Below the pieces are notes generated by a model. It did no database searches and was not told where the DNA came from. It saw nothing but the letters and a program-made list of their open reading frames with translations. The position numbers and the translations under genes were made by a program. Shown here one piece after another: positions 7,989 through 53,915 of a DNA stretch of 64,000 bases (position 1 is its first letter; every line of letters begins with the position of its first letter). Source of the stretch: Stylophora pistillata (lineage: Eukaryota); contig NW_019217823.1 of assembly GCF_002571385.2 (NCBI RefSeq), positions 306,035 through 370,034 on the forward strand. Reading direction: 5' to 3'.

Positions 7989-10900
7989 ATACCAGCGGCT
8001 CAAGCTTTGGAGATTTTTCTGGAGAATTTTATGGTAAGATTCATTCGGCATCTTTTTTGTGTTAGATAAACGTGTGGTAGGTAAACCAAATACTGATCTA
8101 GATATTGCTTTCTAGCCTGCAGAGCAGGTGTAATTTGGGCGAGCGAGTGCTTCGTATTTTCTTAGCGAAATATAGCCGCAATCTTTGATTTTAATCGCAG
8201 CGGAAGGCTAGGGAGAGAGAGAAATTTGTAATAAGGGGATGAGTGACAGTCAATGATAAGAAGAGGGGCTGGGGTGGGGGTGAATATCACTTCCCACCCC
8301 CCATTCCGTCGACTTTGACACCAAATTAAACATGGCCGGTTGAATAAACGATCGCGCGCTTCTTAACTCACCCTAATAAGACCCCTGCACTGCAGGCTAA
8401 TTGCTTTCTTTTATTCGTTGCATGCTTCATCAATCAATGTTCTTGTTCAAACGCGAAAGCTTCACTGAAATCGTATTTCGGTGCATGAAGAAACCGCTCA
8501 TTAATTAGGAATTCAATAAAGCTGAAATGACTTATTTTCAAACGAAATTCTCCAATCCTCTCTTTAGCCGCGCCAAGCAAACCCTGCAAGGTTTTCGTCA
8601 AAAAGTGTGTGTTCGACGTCAATGTAAATGGAGGTGGTCCCGTAGCAGTCGGCACTCATGCTAACATCACCGGCGTCTCAGGGAGTCAACCAACGGGTAC
8701 AATTTATTTGTGTAAATAGTAATTGATTTCTTATGTAACATTTTGGAAATATAAAGTTCAAAATAATCAACAAGGATACTCTGTTAACGATGCTTTCTAC
8801 AGCGTTTTCAATTCTCTTACTGGGCCATTTCTTATCTGTTTCAGAGGAATACGAAAACTCGCCCTCTCCGCAGAGCCACGAAACTGATTCGAAGTCTTAC
8901 TATTACACTAGGAATTATGAGGGAGATTATTGTCCTCACAATTATTATATACAAAAAATTGTGGCAGACTGGACTCCAAAACCACTCAATGGAATTCTTA
9001 TCCAGGAAGGTGAGATCGAAAGAGCGGCTCCCAATACATTATGACTTTTATGGGTGAGAGAGTCTACAATTTGCTTATCATTTGAATTAACAGTTCTTTT
9101 CTAATCTTAATGTTGCACATTGTTATACTTTCACTAGGTGAATTTGATTTCCAGTGGTCTGTCGAATCCTTTCTTGAAAATCCAGAAAAGTTTATTCGAG
9201 AAATGGACACCTGTGCTGGTTCGCTGAGGGAGGAAAAAGAACTGTTCATACTGCGCGGTATTTTGCCATGCCTAGAGCAAGAAATGTGGGGCAAGTCGGG
9301 TTCTAACAACATTGATGTCTACAAGGTCCTTGCTCATGTAAGCAGCAGCCGAGGTAGCGGTGACATTGCAAAGCATTCTCTACAACAACTTCAGCATCTG
9401 CTATACAGGGATTGTATTCAGAGTGCTAAGCAAAATTTGTTGAGTGTGGAAAAGATACTACGATTAACAATCGTTTCCCCAGATGGAGCATTCAAGGAAG
9501 AGGCAGACTCAATACGACTTTCTAGGCTGAAAGTATACGGGTGCATTCTCTCGGAGCTGATCATCCACCAGAATCAAGCAGGGTTCTCTAAAATTGATTC
9601 AAAGAACAACTTGAAGCAGCTTCGGGAAATTAAAAACTTTTTCAGTAAGATCTCCTGGAAAAAGAAAGACATTTTAAGATACTCTATAGAGTTCATCCAG
9701 CAAGCCATTTCTTACCTTACGCAGCCCCTCAATAAGACACTGACTTCAAATTTAGGAAATTACCTCGAGGAATGCAAGAGATACTTTGCAAACTCTGGCA
9801 TTTCAAATGAGGAGTTGTCACTTCTCAAAAAGCTGAAGAAATCTGGAATAAAATGGTGCGAGCTGCACTGTATACTTTATTACCTGCACGGGAAGGTATG
9901 TGTCTTCTATTTATGCAGAGTCCCAGAAATGTTTCTTTCGGCTGCTGGTTCGACCACGCCACCCATATATGATTATCTTAAAGCAATCACAATCAAATTA
10001 GAAATCAAATACTTTATTTAATAGTCAAAATATATATATGGCACCAATCAGACCATTTTGTGTAAATCAGTATAGGTGTTCTGTGAAACATAAATTTATA
10101 AATTTCATAAATTTCACTTTAAAAAAAGCAGGTTGTACCAATTCTGTAGGTCCACACAGAACGTCCGGAACAGGGAAACCAAGAGTGGAGGACCATGGAC
10201 CTTCTAGATCTTGTGCTGAAGGCTCATCTCGATGGGGGAGGAGGAGACGACTGGAAGTTTTGTTTGCTGGCGTCATCTATACTATCAGAGATCGCAATGA
10301 AGAATGCGATTAAAGGTAAACATTTTCACAGGAACATGAAGCTGTCCAATACCGAGAAGGAACATGCTTACATACAATCCTTTCATGCAAAAACCGATTT
10401 GACCTCATTTATTCTGATAGACATAAATTCTTAGTAATTGCACTAAACGAAATAAAAATCTCATTCTATCCTTATTTAATTAGTATGAATTTATACAAGA
10501 GCCCCTAAGGCTGCAGCGATACTTTCAACCTCCCGAATTATAGATGATTGAGCTACCTGTGACCATATCTATATAGGTGAGGAATACCTACAATTTATTA
10601 GCCAAGCATTACCATGACAATATAATATACATTTTTTTCGTTCAAAGCATTGCGATTAAAGGCAAGTTCATGTCTGGATCATCTTCGTAAAAATGAAAAA
10701 GCAAGTAAGAGACCAGAGTGCAGAGCTATAATTGACCGCTTCTCTAGAGAGATGCTGTTTAGTCCTGATAGTTCTATCACCAGCTTGTTGGTAACACATT
10801 TCTATGACAACCAAACTGAGCAGTACACGCTTCCGACAGAGCTCCACAATCAGCACCTAGCGTCAAGTTACAGGACGCACAATTTGGAAATTGACAACGT

Positions 10901-13900
10901 GGTAACTACTGAGCCAAGTCGTGAAACCTCGCGTTGTTTTGTCAGTCACGGTGTATTGAAACGACAAGAAGTGGCGGTAAAGGTCCTAGCCGTTTCTAAG
11001 GGGGATCTCGCACCGAAAGAGTCATCAACGCAGTCGGAGGCGATGAAGCGACTACGTAAAGAAGCATACAACCTGTGGCAACTAGGCAACTTAGAGCTGA
11101 ACCATCCAAACATCCCTTATCTTCTCGCTTACAATACTGTAAACCTTCCTCATCACATAATTACTCCATATGAAAAGTACGGCAATCTTGTCCACTTTGT
11201 GAGGAGCTCACGTGAATGCAGGCCTTTGTCTTCAGGTACTCTTTACAAAATAATAATTGGAGTCATAGAAGCCCTTCAATTCCTGCATCAAAAGCTAAAT
11301 TTGGTTCATCGAGCTGTTACGGCAGAAAACGTTCTGGTTGGCGATGGTTACGTTCCCAAACTTGGTGGAATGCATTCCCTAGGGGAGCTACAACGCGGAG
11401 TAAACAAGGACGGTAAGATTGGTCAACTCTCAGAGCTGCTCATGATCTTTTTTATTCTATAGTTTCATTCAACTCAGACTAAATCTGTAAAGATAACTTA
11501 AGGCAAGTTGATCCCTTATTTGCAAAGACGTTGATTTCACAATTGGGAATGAAACATTTCAGTGGGGGGAATGACGCGCGACTTTCTACTCTGCTCTCAC
11601 GTACTTAGGTAACAGTTCACCTGACTACGATTATGCCGAGAACTACGATGGCTTAAAAGATTTCATCGGCGAGGAAGATGAAACATTATCGGTGAGATAC
11701 AAAGCTCCAGAGACTCTTTCAAGTAATCGCTATTCCATTGCGTCTGATGTGTGGGCTTTAGCAGTGTTTTTGTACGAGACGCTCACCTTAGGTTGTCGTC
11801 CATACAGAGGCTTACAAAAGGATGAAGATGTTCGCCGTTATGTACGTATAAACTATTGTATTCTTAATTCGAACCCTAACGGAATAATCTCCAAACTATT
11901 GTTGCTAATAGTAATACAAATTCAGAAGGTTTGTTTCATCTATTTCGGTCAGGAAGAAGTCTCAACGGCACCCTGCGAAACAATTTCCCGATTTTAACAG
12001 ACGTGCTGTCTTTTCTACAAACACCTAATGTACTCAAAGGCACTGTCGTTACGCTTAAAAAAAATATTGATACAGGCATCTGTCATAGCAAGGCAGCGTA
12101 CATAACAATACACATTTTAAGCTTACCGATTTCATCGTCATGACTTTTGCAGTGGTTTTATAACGTGTAAAAGAACAAAGGTTGAAGGACTTTAGCCCGA
12201 TTGTAGCCATTTTAAAATATCATCTTAAAAGGAATCTGTGCTTCTACTTTTGCAGCATTGATGAATTAGATCTTCTATTTCTAGGTGATAAAGAGTGCAA
12301 TCTTCTATTTTCATTGTTTGAATCGAAACGTTACACAATTCAGCTGTTAAGACAAAGCGTTCTCATGTAATCCTAAGGTTTTGCAAACGACCGACGATGG
12401 AATATTAGAGATATTACCCAAAGAAAGTTGCATTAAGGATGATGAATACAGCCTAATGAAGCAGAGCTGGGAAAAAGAAAGGAGTAAAAGAATCGACCTG
12501 TCTAAGCTCAGAGAAAAATTCATAGATATGCGAAAAAAGATAGCATGCTCAGGTTGGTGATGTTTTCTTCACTTTAACGGTATCACGATGAAAGCTCTAT
12601 GCTATAAATTATCACATGAAAACTCAAGGAAAACATTTCCTAGTTTTGGTGACTATGCCGAAGCGTCGAACTTCCAACTTTCACATCATGAGCGGAAAAC
12701 TAACCTCATGCATTCCACGAGCTTGATCGCGAACTTCGGTCGGTGAAGTTCATGAGCAACGGACAAAAAGCTAGGAGCGATTCGTCTTTCTATGTGGAAG
12801 ATGGGGAGAGCGTAAGTTTTCAGATGAAAAACGCGCCGTTTATTGTGTAGCTAACCCGCAAGAGAAAGAGAAGGAAGGGCTGGGTGCGTAGCCAGTGTAA
12901 GTCAAATTTCAACAAGATTCAAATCAAATAATTTTTTAATTTTTTTTAACTTTTTGTGCTCGCTTTTTACTTTTATAAATATATATATATATCTATATAA
13001 CTGCATATATATATATATATATAGAATGTGTGGTAGTCGGAAAAAAACAACTACAGATACATCCCTACAGACCTGTTGCGGTGTTTTGCGTGTCGGAATG
13101 ATGAGGTGTGGTTGTTGTAGCGCTACTTAAAGTCGTTTGCAGTGAGCCCGATGTATGTGTCTGTCGTGCTGTTGTCTTTACGTGTAATGGTAGCTTGGTA
13201 TATGACAGATTTTTGGAGGCAGTTTCCGTCTAGAGGGCAAGAGTTTTTCTGTCGGCAGTTGCATTTCTTGTTGTTGTTTGCGGTAGAGGTGTCGGTTGTG
13301 GCGGTGGCGTTAGTCTTTACGTGGGAGGTGAGGATTCTTTTGTTGTGGTTGTCGATGATTTGTTTTGTATTGTCCATGCAGCTGTAACTAATTTTGATTG
13401 TGTTTCTGTTGAAAATTCTGCGGAGCTTATGATCTTTGGGGAAGTGTTTGTCAATCAGCGCGAGGAATTTATGTCCGATGTTAGTGCTGGTGTTCTTGGT
13501 GAAAGGCGGGTTGTACCAGAGGATGTTGTTGCGTTGGCGGTTCTTGCGACTTTGTGTGTGCGTTGGTTCGTAGTGGAGTGTGTAGCTGTAACCACTGGTG
13601 TTTAATGCTTTCTGGTAGGCNNNNNNNNNNNNNNNNNNNNNNNNNNNNNNNNNNNNNNNNNNNNNNNNNNNNNNNNNNNNNNNNNNNNNNNNNNNNNNNN
13701 NNNNNNNNNNNNNNNNNNNNNNNNNNNNNNNNNNNNNNNNNNNNNNNNNNNNNNNNNNNNNNNNNNNNNNNNNNNNNNNNNNNNNNNNNNNNNNNNNNNN
13801 NNNNNNNNNNNNNNNNNNNNNNNNNNNNNNNNNNNNNNNNNNNNNNNNNNNNNNNNNNNNNNNNNNNNNNNNNNNNNNNNNNNNNNNNNNNNNNNNNNNN

Positions 13901-16900
13901 NNNNNNNNNNNNNNNNNNNNNNNNNNNNNNNNNNNNNNNNNNNNNNNNNNNNNNNNNNNNNNNNNNNNNNNNNNNNNNNNNNNNNNNNNNNNNNNNNNNN
14001 NNNNNNNNNNNNNNNNNNNNNNNNNNNNNNNNNNNNNNNNNNNNNNNNNNNNNNNNNNNNNNNNNNNNNNNNNNNNNNNNNNNNNNNNNNNNNNNNNNNN
14101 NNNNNNNNNNNNNNNNNNNNNNNNNNNNNNNNNNNNNNNNNNNNNNNNNNNNNNNNNNNNNNNNNNNNNNNNNNNNNNNNNNNNNNNNNNNNNNNNNNNN
14201 NNNNNNNNNNNNNNNNNNNNNNNNNNNNNNNNNNNNNNNNNNNNNNNNNNNNNNNNNNNNNNNNNNNNNNNNNNNNNNNNNNNNNNNNNNNNNNNNNNNN
14301 NNNNNNNNNNNNNNNNNNNNNNNNNNNNNNNNNNNNNNNNNNNNNNNNNNNNNNNNNNNNNNNNNNNNNNNNNNNNNNNNNNNNNNNNNNNNNNNNNNNN
14401 NNNNNNNNNNNNNNNNNNNNNNNNNNNNNNNNNNNNNNNNGCCTACCAGAAAGCATTAAACACCAGTGGTTACAGCTACACACTCCACTACGAACCAACG
14501 CACACACAAAGTCGCAAGAACCGCCAACGCAACAACATCCTCTGGTACAACCCGCCTTTCACCAAGAACACCAGCACTAACATCGGACATAAATTCCTCG
14601 CGCTGATTGACAAACACTTCCCCAAAGATCATAAGCTCCGCAGAATTTTCAACAGAAACACAATCAAAATTAGTTACAGCTGCATGGACAATACAAAACA
14701 AATCATCGACAACCACAACAAAAGAATCCTCACCTCCCACGTAAAGACTAACGCCACCGCCACAACCGACACCTCTACCGCAAACAACAACAAGAAATGC
14801 AACTGCCGACAGAAAAACTCATGCCCTCTAGACGGAAACTGCCTCCAACAATCTGTCATATACCAAGCTACCATTACACGTAAAGACAACAGCACGACAG
14901 ACACATACATCGGGCTCACTGCAAACGACTTTAAGTCGCGCTACAACAACCACACCTCATCATTCCGACACGCAAAACACCGCAACTCCACCGAACTCAG
15001 CAAACACATCTGGACACTTAAAGACAACAACATCAATTATTCCATCACCTGGCGCATCCTATCTTCCCACCTGCCCTACAACAGCTCAAGCAAACGATGC
15101 AACCTATGCCTTAAAGAGAAATTCCTAATCATCTGCCACCCAGACCTATCAACACTCAACAAGCGTAACGAACTCGTCTCTTCCTGCCGACACAGAAACA
15201 AAGCACTCCTACGCAACAGCTGACTTGACACTTTTCACACTGCATAAACCATGTTAATTAGCAATTAGTGTAATATATAAGCGATGGTATCGCATTATTC
15301 TGCCATCAAAATCCCCTGATGAGTGGACAACCACGAAACAGGTCTGTAGGGATGTATCTGTAGTTGTTTTTTTCCGACTACCACACATTATACCCGCTCT
15401 ACTATTTGTATTGAGCACTGTTTCACGAACACCAAGCTTAATCCCTATATATAAATATATAGGTGCAACACTGCATCTCTGGATATCTTGTTTACTGATG
15501 CAGATTGCAAAATGAAAGCAACAAGCCAACGCAGCAAATTATAGTGATTACATCCCTCAACTGTTTATCCCCTTTTATTTCGTTTTTACAAGGTGAAGAG
15601 GAAACGCGGCTTGACCCACCAAGTTTAGAGATGAGCATTGAAAGTGTACGTTAAATGTTAACGGATATGTCAACTTTGTCTTTACAGAAACAAATTCCAC
15701 GTTGGATATTAACTCATTCTCTAGATACCGTCTGCTTTGATAATCATTATTATAACATAACTAAAGTAAAGCGCGCGCTCTGATTGGTCAACGCTGTGAT
15801 GTTTACCATTTGTTAACCCTACAAGCCTTGAAGCTCGAAGAGAACAGTGGGTCTTTGTTTATAAAAAGCAAATTGAAGCTTTATTTCTCGCAGAGATTTT
15901 CCATACATCGCTTTCTTTGTTCCACTTCATAGCTCAAAGTATTTAGCGTCTTTCTTGTCGTATTTTAGTACTCGCATTTTGAAGTACTGGGCTTCAATTT
16001 CTCCTGTGGACTCAGATGTTTTTATTCTAAGTCCATGTAAAGAGAACATTATAGTTATCGCATGCCTGAGCTAAATTTCTTCCTCTATACGTTCAAATTG
16101 AACAGGAACCTCAGCAATCACAAGGATCAATTGAGTCTGAGATTTATACAACCATTTCAGGTAGATATTGGTTTTACTGTTACGTAAACGGTAAGCAAAC
16201 TCACCCCCAAACGTTTTTACCAAGCTAAAATTTCGAGACCTTATTACTGAAAAACGAATCGACCAGCCCACCTCACCGCACTTATCCCATTTGCTGTGAT
16301 TATCCTAAGATCAACATTTCATTCGCAAAATGTTCGTGTATTATATTCGTGTAGAATATTCGTTTTTATTGGCCTTTAAGTTTTTGGTCCAAGTGTTCCA
16401 TCGCAAATGTTATTAAATCCCATTAATTGAGTTTGGCCCAACAATAAGCGAGCTGGACGATGTTCTTTTCTAAGGTAAGACATTTTAATTACACAATGCC
16501 TTTCTCCCCTCATGAGTGTAAATGGTTTCTGGAGAACTGTCAGGGAAGCCGGACAAATAGCTAGGGGGTAGGGGGGTAAATGTGATAACCTAACATCCCA
16601 TCCAGGAGGAGCAGGAATGCCTCTTGTCATTCTACAAAAACAAAGATAGGCCACTCTACACAAGTATAGACTTTACCTCTTACGTTGTCAACTCAGGCAA
16701 AGAACTGGTCATTACTTTCTTGTTTTGTTCAGAATACGGCGACGTTGAATCAACTTCAGGAACCATCTACTGTGAAGAAGACACATACCAGGTAATTACA
16801 TTTGTCAAACTCACAATAATATCTACATCATTTATCATTGTTTCCAGAAATGAAATATTAAATGACAAAACAATTTGACTGTTTTAATACCATGGATCTC

Positions 16901-19900
16901 ACTTAAATTATACATTTTTTATTTTATTATCATCATTATTGTTATTATTATTTTTGATATTATGATAATCTTCCTTATCATTATTATCAGTCATTATTAT
17001 TATTATTATTATTATTAATATTATTATATGCACTTTGTGCACTTTGAATTTAATGTTATTCATTTATTGTTTAGCCTGTATGTGTAGGGTATGGTGCTCC
17101 TGAAACGCTTGTGGATCTACCGACAAATTATCAACAGGTTTGCCCAAACTGCTTCAAACTTTTAGCCAGCCCACTTATATTCTACGCCATTACTCGAAAA
17201 AAATTGTACAACTAAACATACCACTACCATTTGATAGTGGTAGTTGTAAAGGTGATATTAGTAGTGGTATATGGATAATGATCATATTAAACGCAATGAT
17301 TATTATGTTAAAGTATGATAGAGATAATCGTAACAAGTGCAACATAATCAATGAGGCATTTTAGAACTCACTCAAGTTAAACTCGTTATGTTTAAGCTTT
17401 TTCATATTCACCAATGTAACTGTTTTTTGAATAAAGTTCAGTCGGATTGATCATTTTTACTGCTGGTACTGAACTGCTGACACCTTCTTTCATGCAGGAT
17501 GCCATGAAAGAGAAAATTCCTGTAGGAGATAAACAACACTTGAGGAGACTTCTTTGTCTCAGCAATAGTTTTCTTCTTCCCATCAGTCGGATAGACCATT
17601 TAGATTCCCGCAGTCCAGTCGTTGACATTGTAAGTAATACGTCATCATTGGATGCATGAGTCAGCCGCAGCTTTATGAGAATATAAACCAGCTTTGCTCA
17701 TCGACGATGTTACCAGGATTTAGTAATAGTAATCGTAATGTAGTTTATTTCTGACCACTTGCAGCCACGAGGCTGAATTACTGGTACAGTAAGGTTGAGA
17801 ACAGACATCAGTATCTCAGGCGTCTTTGGCAGCCGCTTCAGTCCATGATCCCACCTTCCCACCCATCCCATCCCAGGGGAGGACATTCATCACACAGTAA
17901 TCTCGTGTGTGGGAAATTAACGTCTCCTACCCCAGTCCTGTAAGAGACGGGACCTCCATTTATTCGTCCCTATCCGGGAACACAAGAATATCTAACCATT
18001 TCTTGATGTTATATAAAGGTAGCAAATTCTTCTCAGTTATTTTAAGACCTTGAGTGTTGGTCCTGCCGGGCTCGAACCCTCGACCTTCCGCATAACAGTC
18101 CAGCGCACTATCCTTTGGGCCATCTGGGCGTCGTATTCATTGGTCAATAAAGTCTTTAAAGGCACTACACAAGACCTCTTAAAAGAAGCCTATTCAAATT
18201 TCCCCTGTTTCAAATTAATTATGTTTGAAAGAGCAAACATGAGAGCGAAAAGCGAAAGAGATTATTCGACCCTTTTTCGTTTACTAATTCTTTCCTCGTC
18301 AGATCTCACCACGATCACCCCTTGGGAATTTGAAGGAATTTATCCTTAGCAGAAGATGTCCGTTGGAAAACATCGTCACTTTCCTCTGCCAGGTTGCCAC
18401 AGCTCTACATTATCTTCACGTAAATCATATCGTGCACGGAGATCTTCGGCCTGAACACGTTTATGTGGTGGCTCCAGACCAGGTAAGTATTTTATAGTGA
18501 ACACTGTAAAATTTGCTCTCCAGGATAGAGTCGATCGCCGTTCGAGTGTAGGTGAGCTTAGACGTATCACATTCAAGTTGATGAAATAACCACCTTATGC
18601 GGGAGATGCACCATAATTAAATTGGAAAAAAATATGAGATATATTTAGTATATTATGATTTTCTTCAGGTCCAGCTTGGTCGCCTCGGTCGCTCCAAATC
18701 TCTAACAATGAGTGCCTATGAAGCCACCAGCACTTCATGTGTCGTAGAGGCTGTCATGCCTCCTGATTCCACTCGTTGGTGAGCGTAAACTCGAAACATG
18801 ATAATCTGTTCTCAAGGAAATATTAGTTTTCTACTGGGCGTCAACACCCTATTATAAGGCTATAATTGTGGAATTTGCATCCGCAACAGGTTCAGGTTCG
18901 ATTACACAAAAATGTTTGAAGAGTTTTAGACCTGAATGACATAAAGTTGCGACAAAATGAAATATCTAGCCTTAAAGGAAATCCTCGTAAGGAAGTTAAA
19001 ATATTTAAATTTACTTATTTTTATCCTTCATTCATTTTTTTATCCTTCATTCATTTTTTTGTAGCAATAAAAACAAAGTAGGTGTGTGCAGGTAAAATTA
19101 AATCGACTCCTAAGAAAGAAGTGGGAAAGCTCAACAGAAAGAGTTTAAGACACGATTGGTTTTCTTCCATGTTAGGAGCGCACCAGAGGTGATCCAAGAT
19201 AGCCTCTTTTCTCACGCTAGTGATGTGTGGGCGTTTGGAATCTTAGCATGGGAATTGTACACTGCATTTGCAGCTGGACAACAGAATAGAATCGCTGCAT
19301 TGCCCTACGGCAATATTCCAGCAGATAAGGTACGTTCATGCCTATAAGACACTCAAACCGAAAATAGGATCTGCCGAAATTAATTTAAATCTAACTAGAG
19401 TTTCAATAAAAGCCAGTAATTCAAAGGAGGATGAAATAGAATCAGACTTTGTTGTATCTGGATGGAGACTTAGCAAGATTTTTGATTCTTCAGATTCTAG
19501 ATCATATGAAAGAAAATGGACCTCTTGATCAACCTAGCGGCTGTCCTTATTGGGTTTACATTCTAATGCATCAGTGCTGGACATATGAACCAGTGGAGAG
19601 ACCTCCTTTTATTGCAATCATTGATTGTCTCTCAAGAAGGTATGATGCACTTTATAAGCGGATCAGAAGAGAGCGATTCTCACACTTGACTGCCTTAAAA
19701 CTGACTACTTACCTTTCACTGACTCTAAGAGTCATCCTCTCAATTTTTTCCATCTGCTTCTTTTCAATTTCTTTTACCAGCCAATGATGCTAGTTGTGGT
19801 GAGGTATGATTTTTTTTTTCACCTGGATTTCAAAATTCTACTAACACATCTTGCACTTTTTTAAGGGAACCGATGTTGTCATGGGTGATGCAATTGTGGC

Positions 19901-21126: not shown

Positions 21127-21404
21127 CTTTTTATCTATCGAAATAATTTCAGCAAGAATTTTTAATCAAGTTTAGTTAGAAGTAACGTTGTTCAGATTGG
21201 TGATTATAGTAAGGTGTGACCCGATTCTTTACCAATTACAGCAAAGACATTTTCTATGAAATAGTCATATAAAAGCTATATATTCACAAAGCAATGAAGA
21301 GAATAATTACAAGACTTCTAAGGTAGAGGATTGGACATCCGAGTTGTCTAGCCAGCCCCTACCTGCTTGAACGCCGTTTGACGTTCAAATAGCTGCTGGA
21401 CAAT

Positions 21405-35519: not shown

Positions 35520-35606
35520 GTGTTGAGATTTGTAAATTATTTAAACAGTTGTTCAGTGTCCACTGCAATTTCTTGCACTAGCACAATACGCAAGGCTTCA
35601 TCAATA

Positions 35607-44600: not shown

Positions 44601-47600
44601 GAGACCTTGGTAACGAGATTGAAATATTTGGAGCGTCGTCAATTTTCTTGTTGAGGTGTAAGAAGGCGTTTAATACAGAAAAAAAATGAAACTTTTTCTT
44701 TCGCTTCCGAAATGGCAGACATATTCTGTGGCGAAGTGCCAAGAACTGGGTACGTGACCAACAAGCCATGTATTGGCTGCTACGTCAAGGTGATTTGTGT
44801 CGGTAGCTACGACAAAAGGTACCCCCACGAAAGTTGGTAAGAATAGAGAGTCTGGTGACGAGATTAGGACGTTTAATTGTCAAGGTGTATGTAGCAATAC
44901 AACCCTAACTTGCGTAAATTCAATAACGTCTTTATCCTTCTTGTGTGGTCGAAGGCTGCTTTTTATGGACTCGGTGAGTTTGGGTCCTATACCCACAATA
45001 ACATCAGCAGTCTTGCTCAGATCTACCTCGAGTTCGTGCTTCTTTTCGCCGTCCGTCATCTCATGCCGACCTTTCTTGAACATCGCAATCTCTTCACTTG
45101 AGGTGTGCACAACGTGCACTCGTTTGCATTTCCGTTTCTTCGCTAAGACATTAGCTGGTGTTCCCAACTTGTGTCCATGACCCATTACTACGTCGATTTC
45201 ACATTCATCGGGTGGATAAGACAACGATTGGATACCTTCAATACCAGTCATTTTATCGACCTTGGTAAGGTTTACTCCATGATTTAAGGCGTCTTCCTTT
45301 TCCCTCTCAGTGTACTCTGGCACAATCAAGGTCACCGATACATCACGCTGTTTAGCCAGTCCTTTGCATAGCTCTCTGTTAAGGGTTGACAGTCCACCTT
45401 TTGATGAACGCCACTCATCCANNNNNNNNNNNNNNNNNNNNNAAAAAAAATTACACGCTTCTGAATTGCTGAAAACGGGTGCAATTCTCATGCAACACGA
45501 GTGCAAAGTTTTAACACGAGTGCAAAATAGCGCGGCGCACTGTCAAGACTTCGTCTGTCTTCACCTTCTCTGACGCTTTTTTCATGTAAATATTTAACAA
45601 GTAATAACATGATTTCGAGTGCAATTTGGTGTAAATAAGCACTTTTCAATTTTTTAAAGAATATAAATTGCACTCGCCCTACGAGCTTGTGCAATTTTGT
45701 TGTCTTCAAAAAAATTTATTCGTACTCGTTAATTCCAATTACATTCGAAATCCTGTCATTACCCATACAAAAGGGTAGGATGAAAATAACTTTTATCCTT
45801 TGTTTAAAATTACAATAAAAGAGTGAGCAACATTACAATTTAAGAGTAGGATTTAGCGGTGGAATTTCATTTTGATCGAAATATATTGAGATTCCGACGG
45901 ATTAGATTCTGCCGTAGGAAAACGAATTGAACGATTTGTGGAAGGTAGGAGATCTGGGGAAGGTAGGGGCGAAATTATTTGACTGCAGGGGGCAAACTCA
46001 CAAAGACGGTAAGGGGTGAACAATGAAGTGAAACATCCAGATACCCAGATGGACAAACATTTCTTAGACCCTTTTTTTTCTATCATCCGTGACAGATAAG
46101 TTGCAAATGGGTAATAGCTGGAGGTTTCCATTCTCTTAACATGATAACATACCCGTCGTCCACTGGTCCTACTGGTCGACATTTTCTTCACGGAGTCAAA
46201 CGAAGACCTAGGAATTAAAGACATAAACATTATCTCTCAGGATATTTCATTGACCTCAGGGTCAGGGATGATGAATACTCTGTTGTTTATATACACTGTC
46301 AGGCAGAATTATTAAATAAACTTCCCATCCCTACAAGTTAATGTAACTTTCGTGTGTCTGTGCTGTTTTATAAGTAAAAATTGTTATTGATTGAAGTCGA
46401 ATATTTTGAGAACAAGCGCAGAGTAAGTGCCTGTCGTAAAGACAAATTCATCTCTGTCTGAGTACGGCTTTGCTTTGCTGTGTCCGCTTCCGCTGTTTTA
46501 GGATTTCATGTTTTGTTGTCTGTGCTTGACTTTCTAAAAGGGTGAAAATTAATGGTTGTACTTAAGATGTGCGAGACAGTACAACTGAGTTTTGAACCGC
46601 TTGTAATCCAATATCTTTGTCGTTTGCAGAGATTTGAGGACAGAAAGTTAAGCAAAATGTCTAGGATCTTTGAGTATTGACCTTATTTCACCTTAATTAT
46701 TCAAGGTTTCTCAGAAATCAAACTTGGGGGCCGTTAGTTTCAATCGTTGTTGTCTGTTGTTTACTTTCTATGTGGTTCTCGGAAAGCGAGATAGATGATA
46801 GATGAAAATTAAAGGTTTTCACCCAAACTTATAGGATTTTTGGAATCGCTAGAAAAATCTGGCGTCATTCATAGCGTTTCCAGAAATGTGAATATAACGA
46901 GATTTGTTTTAAAATTTAAGCGGCATGTCACGCATTGTTCATTGGTCTTCTTTACGCTTCATTATCTAAGGTTAAGAGTAGCATTTTTCTCAAAAATCAA
47001 GCTTTTAAACGATTTCAAACTTTTAGCGACTGCCGTAAAATTTAAGAAAATGGTTAAGGCAGCAAGCTTGGGATACGTCATGATCAGAATCACTTCATGA
47101 ATTCATTTGTTATCCTTCTATATGCCTATCCATGCCGTTGATGAGAATGAGGGGATTATGTGTATGCGTTCACCCGCAAGACTGAATTCAGATTTGCTGC
47201 AAATGTGATCATGAAAATGTCTTTTCAAGACATTTCGTAAAGGTTGGGGAAAAGGACAGCGGCAAGGACTGACTCTTAGTCATTTGAAATTTTGACCGGC
47301 TGCGACATACTCATTGGGTCCTTAAGTCTGCGAAGAATCAAGGCAGAAAACAAGATAGTCATACCTAATGAATGAATTGCTCTCTAGCCTACTATTTAGT
47401 TGCTAATCATTGATAAGAAGGGAAACAAAAGAAGGAAAAACTTACGGATTCTCTCTCGAATTCCTTTACGTCGTAGGTGTTCAGCACTAGACAAGGATGA
47501 AACTCTTCCTTTCGCTTCTGTAATGGAAAAGAGCCTTGAAGCATCAGGTAAGACGTGACCGGCAATTTGCCCCAAGAAGCGGTGAGTAGAGAGACCCTGG

Positions 47601-50600
47601 GTCATACCGTGACGTCATAGTATTTATCGTATTACAGTATATGTAACTTGATTTGAGAACGATTAGTTGAGTTTGTGAACGTACTTGTTTTGGATATTCT
47701 TATGAGAACTAGAGCCACCGGAATATTGGTATATAAATTCATTTCATATTGTTTCTCTTTTGTATATTCTGTTACTTTTCGAAGTACATCAAATCAGCGT
47801 TTTGTGATTCATTTCAGTTGAACTTTTGCTTAATATGAAACCAAAGTGTTTAATGTAAATGAGCGCGACAACGAGCGTTTGAATTAGTTTGTCCAAAACG
47901 TTAACACTGTGAATGAGATTGAAAAGTTTTGATCATCGTCTTTTACTTGATTCTATGAACCACACATGTCACGCGACGAAGGCAGACGTAAAAGGATTTC
48001 AGAATGTAGGTCTGTTGTACTTAAATTCAAATTACCGGTTGACTGAAATTGGGAATAAAATCTCTTTGAGTCTAAGTTCATACCAGAACTCAAGTTATAT
48101 TTGACTGGTCCTGAGATCAGCTGTAATTGACTAAGGCGATGAGTGCAAGGCAGCCAGCAGTCTTACCGTAAATATCTTGAACAAAAGCTCATCTTTCAAA
48201 CCGGCAGTCTAAATCCCACAGGGATCAACGAACGCTTTTCATTCCACTAATTTATTCATGTTTGTCTCGTTGCCATGTTCCCANCATTGGAAGAAGACAT
48301 TGTTCGCGCTCAATCGAAGTATCGAATATATTACAACTAGGGACGTAACCATTTGTTCGACTGGCTGTTCCCTAAGAAAGTTCCATTTGTAAGCCCGGTC
48401 CTATTGGCGTACAGGCTGGCTACCCAACTATGAACAGTACTAGTCGAAGAGGGCATTCTTAGAGCTAAGCTGGAGTATCAGTTACATTAGAACTGATACA
48501 CGTTATTAAGCGTTTGAATACATCCAGGTGTACTTCAGGAAACATCTTTTCATTCATAACAATTAGTTAATATCATCACAGAGAATTATGGTCATTATCA
48601 GGGGAGGACGCATGCTCTAATTTCCCTATAATTCCTCTTTTGACAGATATCGACGGACCCTCCTCTTGGAAACCTCAAAGATTATGTTCTGAACAGACGA
48701 TGTCAGCTTGGTGACATTGTTGTGTTCCTTTCACAAGTGGCCTCTGCCTTGCACTTTCTCCACGTAAATCACATCGTTCATGGAGATCTACGAGCCGAAT
48801 ATGTCAATGTTGTAGCACCGGACAAGGTAATTATAACATAACCAAAGTAAAGTGCGCGCTCTGATTGGTCAATTCAGCGTCCACCATTTGCCCATGGGTG
48901 TACGCTGCTGACGTGAGCAAATGCAAAGACTATTTTTCCGCGCGCGCTTGTTTTTTCTGGTCACGTAAGATTTTTTAAATTAAAGGGAACTCTTTAGCTA
49001 CAATGTATCAATGTTATGTTATGAAACAAATGGTAAACACCACAGCGTACACTATTGAGTTATGGATGCACTTGGGAGGTTTACTAAACACTCAAGAAGC
49101 TAGAGTCGCTCTCGGCTATCGCCTCGAACGACTCTTACGCTTCCTTCGTGCTTAGTAACCTCCCGCGTGCATCCATAACTCAGTAGTGTACGCTCTGGTG
49201 TTTACCATTTGTTAATTGTGGTCTAGTGACTAAACATCTGCAATAACCAGGGTTTTAAGCTTTATCACTTGTTCTGATAATGTGCAAGTGATGCAGCCAC
49301 AAACTGTCCAAATATTTAGGTAGAAATAGAACGAAAGTGACACCAGCCTTTTTAATTATGTGCAAGTTTGGTCCAGTTTGGTTTTGCTAAGTTATTGTTA
49401 TTTTTTTTTTTATTTGTTTGTTTCTTTGATGTACAAGAGGGCGATGAACATTTTCATTTAATCCAGGGAATAAAGGGTCTGTAATTCTGTAATATATGTA
49501 CTCTTCAGCTTTTGTCGCCTTGCATGATTTCTATTTACTTTGTTTTTTTTGTGTTTGTTTGTTCCTTTGTCGAGGGCATTATGGGATTTTCTTGATGCTG
49601 TCAAGTAATTAGGCTCAATTTCAAACACACTATCATTCTAAAGGACCTCCTGACTCTGATTTTGCGTTTCTCTTTTTCGTTTCATGTTTTACTTCGTTTT
49701 GTGTTTGGCTATACCCCCTTGTGTTGTACATGTTTTATTGTTCTTGTTGTTGTTGTTTATTCCATGTAAAACAGTGGGAATATTTTTTGTTGTTTTTTGA
49801 AAACAGCATATTTAGCTTAAGGTAGCATTGGGTGAATACTAGAACAAAAACTAATAGAATATAAGAACTAAAGAATGGTATTAATAAAAAATGTTTAAAG
49901 ACTTTCTTTAAATTTGTTACTCACAAATTGACAGAGACTTCATGATCCATTGCAGGTTGAAGTAACCCGTTTTGGTCGCTCCTTGCTTTTACCAAAAAGG
50001 GCGAATGAAAGCACTTCTGCCTCATGTGTAGTTCAGCGTAATATGCCACCTGATGCAACGCGATGGTAAGTAGCTCACAACGAGACAACGGAATATGTAC
50101 AAAGTATCAAGTCGTACTGCATTGAAAATAACAATTAAATTTTCAGACAGCGGTATTCATGAACTGTAGCGAACGCATCTAGGTGTTGGACTAAGTGATG
50201 TATGAGAAAGGGAATGAAAAGCATCCGCTATGAATTGTACTGCTGATGGAACATTAAATTCTTAATCACAGAGGTAACTTCATGCTTGAATACTCCGAAT
50301 TTCTTCTTCTGCGCGTAGCTTTTATCTCAATAATAATTTCATGTCCATTTCATTTTGCAAGAGTTTGGCCTTCAGACATTCACAGAGTTGTTTGCGCGTC
50401 GGAATATTTAGAATTTTAATTGGAAATACAACCTACTTTGTTCCTTAGAATCGAAAAACAGACCGCATTCAATAAAACCCAGAACAAAGTTACTCGCATT
50501 ATTTTTCGAACTCTTTACAATACAAAAGTCAATATGCTTTGTACCCAAGAATTGCAGGTACAAAGCAAAGTTTCGTCGATAAGTCTGAGCGTATTTTGCA

Positions 50601-53600
50601 GTTGCCACGCCAGAATATTACATACGCATTACTGAATGACAAAACATTCTTCATTTTCCAAAGCATCTCATTGAAATGGGAACAATTAAAACTTAAAACC
50701 CCGAAAAATTAAGCCTTTAAACACTTTAAAAACTGAATTGACTGCTGTGAAGTTCGCTTGTAAACCTGTTCTTTAACAACAAAATTAATTCACATTTCTG
50801 GTGAAACTTTGCACAAGACTTACATTGATAAGTTCCTGCTCCTTGTCTCCCGTTTTTGATTTAGTATCCAGCGAAGAAAGAGTCCGGTAACGAGAAAAAT
50901 CGTCCACGAATTATCACTTGTACAGTTTTTTCTAATAACTCGGGCAACTGGCGTTTTATATCAGGGGGGCTCCCTGTTATAATCCAGGGTTCATTTGTCA
51001 ATCATCGACAGCCATTACTAACATACCTCACCCCAGGCAACGTAGAATGCTAAGGTTTCAATAACCAGAATATAGAAATAAATGTCAGTCATGAAAAAAT
51101 CAAGAGCTCAGTGCAAAAGTTTAAGTTTTGAATTTAAAGACCTAATCAATTCAAGCCAATTAATTTGTGGGTTTACTGTGCATGATTTTAGTAGCTTACT
51201 TCGTACGAGGAAAGTCATTTGAAAATCTGAAAGCCAGCGTTTTTGCTATCATTCTTATTTCGAGAGGTATTTTATCAACAGCGCGTTGACAGCTTCATCT
51301 CAATTGACACCTGCTCTCTTTACTTCAACAGGAGCGCACCTGAGGTGATCCAAGACAATAACTATTCTCATGCTAGTGATGTTTGGGCTTTTGCGGTCCT
51401 AGCTTGGGAACTGTACACTGCCTTTGCAACAGGCCAGGAGCATAGGGACTACTCGATCCCTTATCGTAGCCATGCTGCTGAAGAGGTTTGTTCGTTGAAA
51501 AAGTTACGTTTGGACGTAATAATGACAATAATAAAAATAGCTACCTATGATGCACGATCCTCGCAGTAAAGAGCTCTATTTATGCAATAGCGAAAAATAT
51601 ATGAACTTCATAGATTCATAGTAAATAAAAATATCATTAATGATAATAACAATCGTCTTTATTGAGTCCTAAGATGAAAAACCACATATCTGATGTTACC
51701 AAAAAAATTTCCGAAAAAAAAATACCACTTACTCTGTTAGGTTATGATAAAAATGTAGTTGATAAAATAGGAAGGAAGTGCAAATTGGATTGTCACTTAG
51801 CTACTTGATTCACTCAATTTGCTCTCAATTTATTAGTATCGAAATCTAGTTGTCTTCTAATTTTTGTTACGTCATGGGTCCTAAAAAAAGTAAAATGGCA
51901 ATTTGGATCATTGGGACTTAGGCCACGATTCTACGATTAGGAATAACGGAGGAAGGGGTGAGAAAAGAGACTTGGGCCAACCATGAATTGGAATGCGATT
52001 ATAATCCTCCCCCCTCCCTTAGATGCAACAGATCTCGATTTAATGAATAACAATATAACAACGAATGAAAACCCGATTAAAACAGAAGTAGCGTTTAAAG
52101 AGGAATTTCAACCTTAACTCGAATTGAATACCTTGAGAATAAGGTTTTGATTCCCTTAAATCTAATTGAGTGATCTTCTTATTAGGTTATTCATCAAATT
52201 AGAAACGTTGGGCCTCTATCACGACCAGACGGCTGCCCTGATTGGGTGTATATTGTGATGCATCAGTGCTGGGCATTCGACCCAGTACAGAGGCCTCCGT
52301 TCATCGCCATCTTTGATTGTCTCACTACAAGGTGAGTACACAATAATGCACTAATTTTGTAAATCAGAATGATTCTTTGAGAACGGTAAACTGTACCCAA
52401 CTGTGTCCATAAGTTGAACTTGCGAGAGCCCAGGGAGACTTTTTGTGAGGATGCGAGCAAGGCATGGCTCGGTAAAAGACTCGGACTAAAGTAATCAAGC
52501 GATTTTCCGACCTCATTTTACGCCAAACTAACTCAAAGAACGAAGAAAACCGATGACAACAGAAAAACATCAACATTCAATTTAGGAATTATGCTGTATT
52601 GCTTTGTGGATTTTCCGGAACTGAGAACAAGTTTCTCATATTTTAAATTTTATTTAGACCTAAAAGAACTCAAAAGGCATACCATTTGGCAATACTAGAG
52701 AGTTTTCACTGAAAAGTGGGTCCGACCCTCCACGATTCTTAACCACTCGTAATCAAATATCTCGTCTCTCATAGACAACCAATGGACTCTTGGCTTATGT
52801 CATTGTGGAAAGAGCGCCACGAAAAGAGCGAATGGCCTGACCTACCAATTACTCAGACTGAAAACGCCTGTCACATCATCAACAAAGACAAAGACTGTAT
52901 TAAGGACATCATAGAGCAGATGTGTAACGATGGTTAAAAGCTTTCAGAACACGATTAGAGTTATGTTCTCGAAAATGCCACAAATCGAGTGGACGATGAA
53001 CTGTATGATGATCTACCTGAAGAGTGCTCCAAACTCTCTCCAGATGTGATAGAGCAGGAGACGTATGAAGACGTTTCCTCGATCAGTCGACCTGACTGTA
53101 CTTTTGACGAAAAAAGAGTAGGGAGACCGACAGGCTCCAACATTTCTTCCACTGAGCCTCGATACCAAAATGTAAAGAATTTCGGCCCCAAGAACATTAC
53201 GGGTCATAAACAAGAACAGGAGCTCTACGATGACCTCGTTTCCCCGGAGGTAGTAGAGGTGGCACAAGAAGAGGAAGAAACGTACGATGACATCAGAGGT
53301 GAAGAAGAGGCGGGCGAAGAATTCTATGGTGATATTGAAGAACGATCTCGCGATCCTCGCTACGGAGCGAGCAGAGATAAGCCTTCTTCAAAAGGGACTA
53401 ACTCCCCTTTGAACACCAAGAGTCAAGAACCTTCTTTGGGAGAGGACAATTACTCATTGGACAAAGAAACGGACCAAATAGATTTAGAGGATTTATACGA
53501 GGACATCGACAATCTCAGGCCACCACCGTATGCAAAGGCTTGTAATGTGACAGAGGAAGAAAATGTTGACTCACTAAACGCCAGCTGCGATCCCCTAGGG

Positions 53601-53915
53601 GGTGTTCCCCGCTTGAACGAGGACGAAACCCTCTATGAGGAAATAAGAGGAAATCAATCAACAGATTCGGGGGCGTACCAAAGTACTACAGGTCCCCAAA
53701 ATGATCAAGCCACAAGGAACCGAGATGAAACAGGATATGGAGAACTTAACTCAAGAGAGTCGTACATGCATCTGACAGGACCCAAAGCAAATTCCAACTC
53801 AAAGGAAACCGGTCCGGTAATGAAAAACGCTGCAAAGCTAAACAACCGCAGGTGCTACCTCAAGAAAAAGGAAACAGTTAATGATCAGCTTGTCAATACA
53901 ATTAAGGAACCTTAA
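35607..53915 (+). CDS. Gene C: paralog of gene A with RHIM-like N-terminal exon; premature stops at 52935 and 52956 ahead of the Tyr-rich tail (truncated allele or young pseudogene)
   Basis: Exons: 35607-35622 (MEGHG|gtaagt), 36769-36894, 37609-37860 (WTPKP motif shared with gene A exon 8845-9009), 38130-38899, 39232-39400, 39530-40276 (VIVK, HRALMAENILV, KLSGMH), 40736-40971, 41251-41416, 41625-41674, 42132-42236, 42543-42683, 43257-43436 (second copy 48647-48826; HGDLRAEYV), 49956-50065 (TRFGRS), 51332-51485, 52186-52331, 52775-53915. The 180, 110, 154 and 146-nt exons match gene A in length. Confidence 0.82.
42895..49212 (+). repeat. ~930-bp direct repeat (42895-43822 / 48285-49212) containing a gene C exon and bracketing a gap-bounded insert
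   Basis: Constant 5390-nt offset. Identical except within the hairpin repeat. The second copy starts right after the 'n' at 48284. Confidence 0.9.
44912..46182 (-). pseudogene. GT4 glycosyltransferase paralog, 5' portion only
   Basis: ATG exon 46182-46153 (MSTSRTSGRR|gtatgt) sits in the same context as 59883-59848. Coding 45420-44912 reads DEWRSSKGGLSTLNRE...DVIEFT, then jumps into non-coding repeat. 44912-45107 is nearly identical to 56354-56549. Confidence 0.75.
48829..49214. mobile_element. Hairpin-bearing interspersed repeat (other copies 43439-43822, partial 39043-39197, ends only 15748-15816)
   Basis: Shared left end ttataacataaccaaagtaaagtgcgcgctctgattggtcaa. Long imperfect palindrome ttgagttatggatgcac...gtgcatccataactca. 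Right end tttaccatttgttaa. Confidence 0.75.

What the first reader, a model, noticed from the sequence alone, without database searches (positions are those of the whole stretch)
7989..53915. Tandem array of three genes encoding an unrecognised helical domain / double pseudokinase / phosphotyrosine-tail architecture
Seen: three spliceable paralogs with conserved intron positions and no signal peptide or transmembrane segment. Both kinase folds are catalytically degenerate. Domain 1 (all three genes) has HRD->HRA, DFG->GMH/GMQ and no Gly loop. Domain 2 (A and C) has the catalytic Asn replaced by His/Tyr, DFG->RLG/RFG and a shrunken N-lobe. Tyrosine-kinase-type C-lobes (APE, SDVWAFG, CW..RP) are retained. 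Known: animal two-kinase-domain proteins such as JAKs and GCN2 pair a pseudokinase with an active kinase, and plant tandem-kinase resistance proteins act as immune sensors. Inference: this is a non-catalytic switch or scaffold family. Tandem expansion, strong paralog divergence, variable termini and kappaB-like sites suggest innate immunity, allorecognition or symbiosis signalling.
Basis: partly seen in the sequence, partly recalled or inferred. Interest (0 to 1): 0.92.

Follow-up and report, generated by a model that had tools for sequence, protein, structure and literature searches.

The report
Coral double dead-kinase scaffold gene cluster
Three neighbouring coral genes, part of a six-gene cluster, encode an unstudied protein family of stony corals and sea anemones that joins a helical repeat domain to two catalytically dead tyrosine-kinase folds and a tyrosine-rich floppy tail, most likely a non-enzymatic signalling scaffold.

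Summary
The observation largely holds. The window lies on a 1.1-Mb Stylophora pistillata scaffold. It carries three + strand paralogs (A, B, C) with this layout: short N-terminal motif exon, helical domain, pseudokinase 1, truncated pseudokinase 2, conserved segment, tyrosine-rich disordered tail.

RNA contigs from three studies show nine GT..AG junctions of gene C. One contig joins the helical domain and both kinase folds. Gene A is RefSeq LOC111322652, "uncharacterized protein".

- The array has six genes, not three, plus one copy elsewhere.
- The "unrecognised" helical domain is a generic ARM/HEAT-like alpha-solenoid with no sequence relatives outside this family.
- Gene B lacks pseudokinase 2, and its APE exon is not in the read sequence; it may lie in an assembly gap.
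- Two in-frame stop codons cut gene C's tail off.
- A 929-bp duplication repeats one gene C exon.

The catalytic losses are ancient. They are shared with Montipora, Acropora, Oculina and Nematostella. All exons are under purifying selection (dN/dS 0.15-0.52), so this is not decay.

No paper on the family was found. A scaffold role is inferred. The immune or allorecognition idea is untested; its only support is context, namely neighbouring GT4-conflict genes and one Montipora fusion model. I rate it a new variant of a known kind (pseudokinase scaffolds), of moderate interest.

The parts
7973..21126 (+). Gene A = S. pistillata LOC111322652 (isoforms X1/X6). Full architecture, about 18 coding exons.
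   Evidence: P0086/P0089 map at 99-100%. The first coding exon lies at about 7973-8032.
8567..8695 (+). Gene A N-terminal motif exon, with the pattern ..V-x-V-N-G-G-G-P-V-A-V-G-x-x-A-x-I-x-G. It is conserved in all paralogs and in Nematostella.
   Evidence: No Pfam or PDB match.
9104..9898 (+). Gene A helical (ARM/HEAT-like alpha-solenoid) exon.
   Evidence: The paralogous exon of gene C was modelled.
10150..12545 (+). Gene A exons 10150-10320, 10629-11417, 11611-11844 and 12408-12545: the rest of the helical region plus pseudokinase 1 (VAVK kept, HRA, GGMH, APE, SDVWALA).
   Evidence: Pfam PF07714 E 2.8e-13 and 1.3e-11; motifs.
13621..14440 (.). Assembly gap inside a gene A intron, flanked by the inverted repeat 13075-13620 / 14441-14986 (99.5%).
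   Evidence: RefSeq protein residues are contiguous across it.
15592..17137 (+). Gene A inter-kinase linker exons 15592-15645 (conserved ..DPPSLE.. motif), 16729-16791 and 17075-17137. One small exon between 15646 and 16728 was not located.
17504..19640 (+). Gene A pseudokinase 2 exons 17504-17635, 18300-18491, 18654-18779, 19174-19338 and 19494-19640 (HGDLRPEH, GRLGRS, SAPE, SDVWAFG, CW..RP). The N-lobe is cut down to about 45 residues.
   Evidence: Pfam PF07714 profile positions 84-142, 172-200 and 214-258 only; motifs. A model of the paralog's PK2 matches tyrosine kinases.
19858..21126 (+). Gene A last exon: a conserved ~65-residue segment (EPMLSWVMQLW...) followed by a 4.5% Tyr, acidic tail with two ..PGYINVP.. 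repeats.
   Evidence: The equivalent tail of paralog U1 is modelled as disordered.
25641..32868 (+). Gene B: N-motif exon 25641-25727 (duplicated at 26849-26935 across gap 26019-26690), helical exon 27696-28448, 28805-28978, PK1 exon 29206-29955 (HRA, SGMQ), gap 29974-30282 (APE exon not visible), 30391-30528, about 30740-30800, and tail exon 31771-32868. No PK2 exons.
   Evidence: Its closest paralog U3 and the Oculina B-type ortholog both have PK2.
36783..52937 (+). Gene C. Exons: 36783-36875; ..37860; 38130-38899 (helical); 39232-39400; 39530-40276 (PK1); 40736-40971; 41251-41416; 41625-41674; 42132-42188; 42543-42683; 43257-43436 (PK2 catalytic loop, HGDLRAEY); 49956-50065 (TRFGRS); about 51332-51485; 52186-52331; 52775-52937, ending at a TAA.
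   Evidence: RNA junctions; splice sites and phases; Pfam.
52935..52958 (+). Two in-frame stop codons in gene C (TAA 52935-52937, TAG 52956-52958), at positions where the Oculina ortholog has F and Y.
52989..53915 (+). 308-codon ORF in the same frame as gene C's last exon. It is collinear with the Oculina ortholog's tail and holds six Y-[DE]-[DE]-[ILVM] motifs.
   Evidence: The six motifs compare with 0.11 expected; none of 2000 shuffles reached the observed count.
42895..43823 (+). 929-bp block repeated at 48285-49213 (99.2%), containing gene C's PK2 catalytic-loop exon. The block between the copies is bounded by N runs and carries a GT4-conflict fragment. It is either a possible assembly mis-insertion or a real insertion.
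44883..45419 (-). GT4-conflict glycosyltransferase fragment (N-terminal half) inside gene C's longest intron, cut by gap 45422-45442.
   Evidence: Pfam PF20706 E 1.4e-45.
55745..59172 (-). Two GT4-conflict glycosyltransferase ORFs downstream of gene C: 55745-56554 (partial) and 58030-59172 (complete domain).
   Evidence: Pfam PF20706 E 2.2e-62 and 1.8e-95.

Best explanation
These genes belong to a family known so far only from stony corals and sea anemones. They encode cytoplasmic, non-catalytic signalling scaffolds.

Each protein has, in order:
- a short conserved N-terminal motif;
- an alpha-solenoid of about 430 residues (ARM/HEAT-like), a likely protein-binding surface;
- a complete but dead tyrosine-kinase fold (PK1). 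It keeps the beta3 Lys, alphaC Glu and catalytic Asn but lacks the Gly loop, the HRD Asp and the DFG Asp;
- a linker;
- a second dead tyrosine-kinase fold (PK2) without strands beta1-beta3;
- a conserved segment of about 65 residues;
- a long acidic, disordered tail rich in tyrosines.

Shown: the architecture, its expression as one spliced transcript, the ancient loss of catalytic residues, and purifying selection.

Inferred: active tyrosine kinases phosphorylate the linker and tail in trans. SH2-domain proteins then dock there (pYxN of the Grb2 type in A and B; acidic pY-[DE]-[DE]-[ILV] of the Src-SH2 type in the C-type tail). The solenoid and the two kinase folds would act as binding or conformational modules.
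For: Architecture and transcription:
- Exon-level paralogy.
- RNA junctions, with one contig spanning the solenoid, PK1 and PK2.
- RefSeq models of the same layout in Stylophora, Montipora, Acropora, Oculina and Nematostella.

Dead kinases kept by selection:
- Motif table over 18 full-length proteins.
- A divergent metagenome member also has HRA with the Lys and Glu kept.
- dN/dS is 0.15-0.52 in all 11 exon comparisons of A against U1.

Tyrosine-kinase origin: PDB sequence hits to Eph/Abl (PK1) and EGFR/LET-23/Fes/JAK (PK2); fold hits to SYK, JAK and EGFR.

Solenoid: model pLDDT 88.9 with 14 helices; best structural matches are HEAT/ARM proteins at Z 8-10.

Tail:
- pLDDT is about 27 over some 330 residues.
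- Tyr content is 3.8-4.9% and Asp+Glu 15-23%.
- Six Y[DE][DE][ILVM] motifs in the C-type tail against 0.11 expected, conserved in position with Oculina.

Cytoplasmic: no transmembrane-grade hydrophobic stretch.
Against: - No biochemical or phosphoproteomic datum exists.
- Tyr-motif enrichment is significant only in the C-type tail, and in this assembly that tail lies behind two stop codons. In A and B the YxN counts (2 each) are within chance.
- PK1 keeps Lys, Glu and Asn, so nucleotide binding or atypical activity is not excluded.
- The solenoid match is generic and says nothing about partners.
Confidence: 0.6

Rival explanations
1. Innate-immune sensor or bait. The dead kinase folds mimic host kinases targeted by pathogen or symbiont effectors, as in plant tandem kinase proteins and integrated decoys. 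Binding would be reported through the tail or through neighbouring conflict-type proteins.
For: - Tandem expansion to six or seven copies.
- GT4-conflict ORFs next to and inside the cluster.
- A Montipora RefSeq model fuses GT4-conflict to this family's solenoid and PK1.
- Glycosyl-transferase-1 genes are expanded in corals and often combined with NACHT/LRR (PMC12314368).
Against: - dN/dS is below 0.55 everywhere tested.
- The A, B and C types are old and have 1:1 orthologs in Oculina, unlike fast-turnover receptor families.
- The GT4 ORFs here lie on the opposite strand.
- kappaB-like sites are not convincing.
- No expression data under challenge were obtainable.
Confidence: 0.17
2. PK1 is an atypical but functional nucleotide-binding switch or weak kinase, so the protein signals enzymatically or through ATP-dependent conformational change.
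For: The beta3 Lys (VAVK), alphaC Glu and catalytic-loop Asn of PK1 are conserved in all 17 members compared that carry PK1.
Against: The Gly-rich loop, HRD Asp and DFG Asp are all absent from PK1 in every member. PK2 lacks the whole ATP-binding sheet.
Confidence: 0.1
3. Decaying duplicates or annotation artefacts of an ordinary tyrosine kinase gene.
For: - Gene C carries two in-frame stops and gene B lacks PK2.
- The region has gaps, duplications and chimeric database models: RefSeq isoforms X2-X5, and a 4153-residue GenBank model named 'Ephrin type-A receptor 4a'.
Against: The same degenerate motifs occur in Nematostella and many corals. Selection is purifying. Transcripts are spliced and stranded.
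Confidence: 0.03

Closest known systems
JAK family (FERM-SH2-pseudokinase JH2-kinase JH1)
   Same: Cytoplasmic, tyrosine-kinase-group origin, with two kinase folds in tandem of which the first is a pseudokinase. JAK and TYK2 chains are among the PDB hits of PK2.
   Different: Both folds are dead here. The N-terminus is an alpha-solenoid, not FERM-SH2 (no Pfam hit). PK2 lacks beta1-beta3. There is a long C-terminal Tyr-rich tail.
PEAK1 / PRAG1 (Pragmin) / PEAK3 pseudokinase scaffolds (from general knowledge)
   Same: A dead kinase fold combined with helical elements and a long disordered region carrying SH2-binding tyrosine motifs. Their function is as docking scaffolds.
   Different: Those proteins have one pseudokinase from a different kinase branch, flanking dimerisation helices rather than a 430-residue solenoid, and an N-terminal disordered region. 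No sequence relation was detected.
Plant tandem kinase proteins (WTK1/Yr15, RPG1, Rwt4; PMC6170490)
   Same: Tandem kinase/pseudokinase proteins without a membrane anchor; gene-family expansion.
   Different: The plant proteins are of plant receptor-like-kinase origin and usually keep one active kinase. They have no solenoid and no Tyr-rich tail. Here the nearest kinases are animal tyrosine kinases.
Pseudokinase plus helical-repeat proteins (SCYL1-3, ULK4; MLKL for helical N-terminus plus pseudokinase) (from general knowledge)
   Same: A dead kinase fold joined to an all-helical domain.
   Different: In SCYL and ULK4 the repeats follow the kinase. MLKL has a four-helix bundle. None appears among the structural or sequence hits of the solenoid.

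Membership tests
Protein kinase fold, tyrosine-kinase group | Significant match to Pfam PK_Tyr_Ser-Thr (PF07714), with nearest solved relatives being tyrosine kinases | tested here: met
   PK1 exons E 2.8e-13 to 2.6e-19; PK2 exons E 3.4e-07, 1.1e-09 and 7.7e-08. PDB hits are Eph/Abl and EGFR/Fes/JAK. The PK2 fold matches SYK at E 7e-12.
Catalytically competent protein kinase | Gly-rich loop, beta3 Lys, HRD Asp and DFG Asp all present | tested here: not met
   PK1 keeps the Lys but has no Gly loop, HR[A/V/C/S] in place of HRD, and [SGT]G[ML][HQG] in place of DFG. PK2 has no beta1-beta3, its DFG Asp is lost, and its catalytic Asn is His or Tyr in corals.
[quoted passage not shown] | Kinase fold lacking the beta3 Lys, HRD Asp or DFG Asp, and conserved as such | tested here: met
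   The losses are shared by all family members compared that carry the domain, including Nematostella. dN/dS is 0.15-0.45 in the kinase exons.
JAK family | N-terminal FERM and SH2-like domains; C-terminal active kinase | tested here: not met
   No FERM or SH2 Pfam match in the window exons or in full-length relatives. The second kinase fold is dead.
Plant tandem kinase proteins | Two kinase-like domains of plant RLK/Pelle-type origin | tested here: not met
   The tandem layout is met, but the best relatives of both domains are animal tyrosine kinases. No phylogeny was built.
MLKL-like | N-terminal four-helix-bundle executioner domain before a pseudokinase | tested here: not met
   The N-terminal exon models as a 14-helix solenoid. 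The top 50 structural hits are HEAT/ARM-type proteins with no MLKL among them.
ARM/HEAT repeat proteins | Recognisable ARM or HEAT sequence repeats; alpha-solenoid fold | tested here: inconclusive
   The fold resembles solenoids at Z 8-10, a level common for helical repeats. The best Foldseek E is 0.04, to designed ARM proteins. There is no Pfam ARM/HEAT match and no PDB profile match.
RHIM-containing signalling proteins | Core tetrad V/I-Q-V/I-G (PMC12119088) | tested here: not met
   The N-terminal motif has VAVG, TAVG or VIVG, so the Gln is absent. There is no Pfam hit at E up to 10 and no PDB hit.
PEAK/Pragmin pseudokinase scaffolds | PEAK-type pseudokinase flanked by split helical dimerisation domain | not tested
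   No PEAK chain appears among the best 60 PDB sequence hits, but no dedicated comparison was run.
GT4-conflict glycosyltransferases (neighbouring ORFs only) | Match to Pfam PF20706 above its cut-off | tested here: met
   E 1.8e-95, 2.2e-62 and 1.4e-45 for the three minus-strand ORFs.

The most novel reading that the evidence does not exclude
The conserved N-terminal exon (h-x-h-x-V...G-A-V-A-V-G-P-x-A-x-I-x-G in robust corals; ..S-V-I-V-G-D-N-G-A-I.. in Nematostella) may be a RHIM-like, beta-hairpin oligomerisation or amyloid-nucleating motif. If so, the family would be a cnidarian signalling hub that combines a RIPK-style assembly motif with dead kinase folds and a phosphotyrosine docking tail. 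It could be wired to the neighbouring conflict-type glycosyltransferases in an immune or cell-death pathway.
Probability: 0.08. Interest if true: 0.85.

Novelty: new variant of a known kind. Interest (0 to 1): 0.58.

Why it matters
Pseudokinase scaffolds are established signalling devices. To my knowledge (from general knowledge, not tested here), no animal protein has been described with two tandem dead tyrosine-kinase folds and no active partner domain, preceded by a large solenoid and followed by a tyrosine-rich docking tail.

The family is old, dating to at least the split between stony corals and sea anemones. It is under selection, expressed, and expanded in tandem in a reef-building coral. 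Databases label its members only "uncharacterized" or give them misleading names such as "Ephrin type-A receptor 4a", "ptk6" and "fibroblast growth factor receptor 2".

It offers a tractable entry into cnidarian phosphotyrosine signalling, because Nematostella has orthologs. It may also serve as a test case for how kinase folds are reused without catalysis. If the immune link suggested by the GT4-conflict neighbours holds, it would add a new component to coral innate immunity.

Tried and rejected
- ESM Atlas look-up of the helical exon: no usable hit.
- Foldseek against PDB for the helical model: nothing at E <= 0.001.
- Profile of 32 helical-domain sequences against PDB sequences: only noise, E 0.22 and 0.84.
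- Literature: searches by six gene symbols found nothing. Two searches by protein accessions and by cell-atlas terms timed out. The S. pistillata cell-atlas supplements that are held do not contain the accessions. The holozoan tyrosine-kinome paper does not describe the family. One cited pseudokinase survey is not held.
- RHIM reading of the N-terminal motif: the defining Gln is absent, and there is no Pfam or PDB support. It is kept only as a low-probability lead.
- A candidate extra exon between gene C exons 42543-42683 and 43257-43436 (43214-43252) was rejected, because RNA joins 42683 directly to 43257.
- The idea that variable 5' modules share one constant 3' module, prompted by RefSeq isoforms X2-X5, was rejected. 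Every copy except B has its own PK2 and tail, and a transcript-derived protein joins U1's 5' half to U1's own 3' half.
- No short intron can remove gene C's two stops in frame.
- Ten other ORFs in the window: no Pfam match.
Full report
WHERE THE WINDOW LIES. It is G000:C40:306035-370034 on a contig of 1,103,938 bp. RefSeq proteins of Stylophora pistillata from a contig of the same length match gene A at 99-100%. RNA runs that hold the stretch are labelled as coral. This is therefore a stony-coral nuclear locus.

THE OBSERVATION.
- Large + strand ORFs fall into three groups with pairwise 40-70% protein similarity, exon by exon.
- Pfam finds PK_Tyr_Ser-Thr twice in genes A and C and once in B. 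It finds nothing in the first large exon or in the tails.
- I laid RNA on 37700-43600. Contigs from three independent studies, and stranded raw reads from a fourth run, give nine junctions. All are GT..AG after the stated offsets, and all are phase-consistent.
- One 3351-nt contig runs from the helical exon through PK1 into PK2. The loose end behind exon 43257-43436 matches the next exon at 49956. Both kinase folds therefore belong to one transcript.
- The raw reads lie with the first mate on the minus strand only. This fits + strand RNA in a standard stranded library.
- For gene A, the RefSeq isoforms X1/X6 (P0089, P0086) give the exon chain.
- I searched and folded only single exons by reference, or database proteins returned by the tools. 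The joined spliced model was not handed to any search or fold tool. One script joined gene C's last exons only to check that a stop-free frame exists, and printed no sequence.

GAPS, TESTED FIRST AS ASKED.
- 13621-14440 is intronic in gene A. The RefSeq protein is contiguous across it, and a 99.5% inverted repeat flanks it.
- 26019-26690 sits between 536-bp direct repeats that duplicate gene B's N-terminal motif exon. This pattern is typical of an assembly overlap.
- 29974-30282 follows gene B's PK1 exon. The APE/SDVW exon expected there is not visible, so B's PK1 C-lobe is unread. I did not fill it.
- 43886-43959 and 45422-45442 lie in the 6.5-kb interval between two gene C exons. They sit inside a block bounded by a 929-bp, 99.2% direct duplication (42895-43823 = 48285-49213) that repeats the PK2 catalytic-loop exon. 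RNA bridges the interval.

CORRECTIONS.
1. The helical exon occurs eight times in the genome, seven of them within C40:236-344 kb. Mapping all exon types over 144 kb shows six genes: U1, U2, U3, A, B and C. Each except B has its own PK2 and tail.
2. Gene B has no PK2 exons. Its nearest paralog U3 (tail 88% identical) and the Oculina B-type ortholog do have PK2.
3. Gene C reads ...EQMCNDG, then TAA, and 18 bases later TAG, in the same frame as the following 308-codon ORF. The Oculina ortholog aligns straight through, with F and Y at those places. No plausible intron removes the stops. In this assembly the C tail is therefore cut off. This could be a recent truncation, a polymorphism, a sequencing error or read-through. 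I cannot tell which.

WHAT THE PARTS ARE.

Helical exon.
- With 32 family sequences it models at pLDDT 88.9 and pTM 0.87, as 14 helices.
- Foldseek gives only weak matches to designed armadillo proteins (best E 0.04).
- The full VIA scan gives HEAT/ARM solenoids (Integrator, CAND1, importin-beta) at Z 8-10. The tool notes that this level is common for helical repeats.
- It is a generic alpha-solenoid. By paralog and ortholog alignment it continues through the next exon and the first ~100 residues of the PK1 exon.
- By sequence it is an orphan. An exhaustive phmmer scan of 1.84 billion representatives gave 38 hits. Most are single-exon fragments; two are full-length proteins, from Montipora and Nematostella. 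A second search added Acropora, Desmophyllum, Oculina and Stylophora.
- Two of the most divergent hits are again followed by kinase exons on the same strand.

Pseudokinase 1 (PK1).
- It is a full-length tyrosine-kinase-type fold, with best PDB relatives Eph and Abl.
- In all 17 members compared that carry PK1 it keeps VAVK, the alphaC Glu and the catalytic Asn.
- In all of them it has HR[A/V/C/S] instead of HRD, [S/G/T]-G-[M/L]-[H/Q/G] instead of DFG, and no Gly-rich loop.

Pseudokinase 2 (PK2).
- It matches Pfam profile positions 84-258 only.
- The model of paralog U1's PK2 shows one strand, an alphaC-like helix and two strands before the C-lobe. It matches SYK, JAK and EGFR kinases.
- The DFG Asp is lost everywhere.
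- HRD is HGD in robust corals, HGA or HGN in acroporids and HCS in Nematostella.
- The catalytic Asn is His or Tyr in corals but is kept in Nematostella.

Tail region.
- After PK2 comes a conserved segment of about 65 residues. It is poorly modelled, with pLDDT about 30-40.
- A tail then follows that is modelled as disordered (pLDDT about 27).
- The tails have 3.8-4.9% Tyr and 15-23% Asp+Glu.
- The C-type tail has six Y[DE][DE][ILVM] motifs against 0.11 expected. B has six Yxx[ILV] against 2.2 expected. The YxN counts in A and B are within chance.

Membrane anchoring. No transmembrane-grade hydrophobic stretch exists in five full-length relatives.

SELECTION AND AGE.
- Between A and its nearest paralog U1, dN/dS is 0.15-0.52 in all eleven exon comparisons, tail included.
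- Oculina has separate orthologs of A (70% identity in the helical exon), B (61%) and C (65%). The three types therefore predate the split of those corals.
- Nematostella shares the degenerate motifs.

MECHANISM. The best-supported reading is a non-catalytic scaffold. The solenoid and the two kinase folds would act as binding or switch modules, and the linker and tail as phosphotyrosine docking sites. Only the anatomy, expression and constraint are shown. Phosphorylation and SH2 recruitment are inferred from composition and motifs. Rivals are an immune bait or sensor role, residual nucleotide-dependent function of PK1, and decay. Decay is rejected for the family but is possible for gene C's tail.

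CONTEXT.
- Three minus-strand ORFs match Pfam GT4-conflict: 58030-59172, 55745-56554 and 44883-45419.
- One Montipora RefSeq model fuses GT4-conflict to this family's solenoid and PK1.
- A paper on Acropora reports expansion of glycosyl-transferase-1 genes, often combined with NACHT/LRR (PMC12314368).
It is a lead, not evidence.
- Together this is a weak hint of an immune setting.
- kappaB-like sites number 9 against 3.05 +/- 2.1 expected, but four of the nine are overlapping or palindromic counts of the same places.

NOVELTY. Database names are "uncharacterized protein" or misleading ones: a 4153-residue merged model called Ephrin type-A receptor 4a, plus ptk6 and FGFR2. I found no paper on the family, within the limits of the held library and two timed-out searches. 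The kind of protein (pseudokinase scaffold) is known. This architecture appears undescribed.

SIDE LEAD. A conserved short N-terminal exon resembles a RHIM at first sight, but it lacks the defining Gln and has no database support.

Noticed in passing
window 8567-8695, 25641-25727 (= 26849-26935), 36783-36875; also upstream paralogs at C40:235865, 265400, 273010, 292998: Every paralog starts with a short conserved exon carrying h-x-h-x-V...G-A-V-A-V-G-P-x-A-x-I-x-G. Nematostella relatives have ..S-V-I-V-G-D-N-G-A-I.., and acroporid relatives lack it. It looks RHIM-like but has no Gln in the tetrad and no Pfam or PDB match.
   Followed up: partly
window 58030-59172 (-), 55745-56554 (-), 44883-45419 (-): Three ORFs match Pfam GT4-conflict (glycosyltransferase of conflict systems). 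One lies inside gene C's longest intron. A Montipora RefSeq protein (P0077) fuses this domain to the family's solenoid and PK1.
   Followed up: partly
window 39079-39275 and 43413-43600; related ORFs at 38862-39143, 43613-43765, 49003-49155: An interspersed repeat in gene C introns has RNA depth in the thousands and shows inverted-orientation joints between copies. It is probably a highly transcribed SINE/MITE-like element.
   Followed up: no
G000:C40:236424-241017 joined to window 17087-21123: RefSeq isoforms X2-X5 of LOC111322652 join the 5' half of upstream paralog U1 to the 3' half of gene A across about 82 kb. A transcript-derived protein (P0095) instead joins U1 to its own 3' half, which RefSeq annotates separately as LOC111322653. 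The joined isoforms are likely annotation chimeras caused by gaps at C40:241810-242680 and 244497-245809.
   Followed up: partly
window 13075-13620 / 14441-14986 and ORF 14684-15223: A 546-bp perfect-looking inverted repeat flanks the 820-N gap. It contains a Cys-rich 179-residue ORF with no Pfam match. It is either a palindromic assembly artefact or a transposon with long inverted ends.
   Followed up: no
window 43960-44913 vs 61382-62343: An 86%-identical 970-bp repeat links the block inserted in gene C's intron to the region beside the downstream GT4-conflict gene. This suggests that the intronic block is a copy, or a misplaced contig, of that neighbourhood.
   Followed up: no
P0062 (Logan transcript-derived protein, 841 aa, another cnidarian): This family member goes from the solenoid straight to PK2 with no PK1. 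It shows that architectures lacking PK1 exist, alongside those lacking PK2 such as gene B.
   Followed up: no
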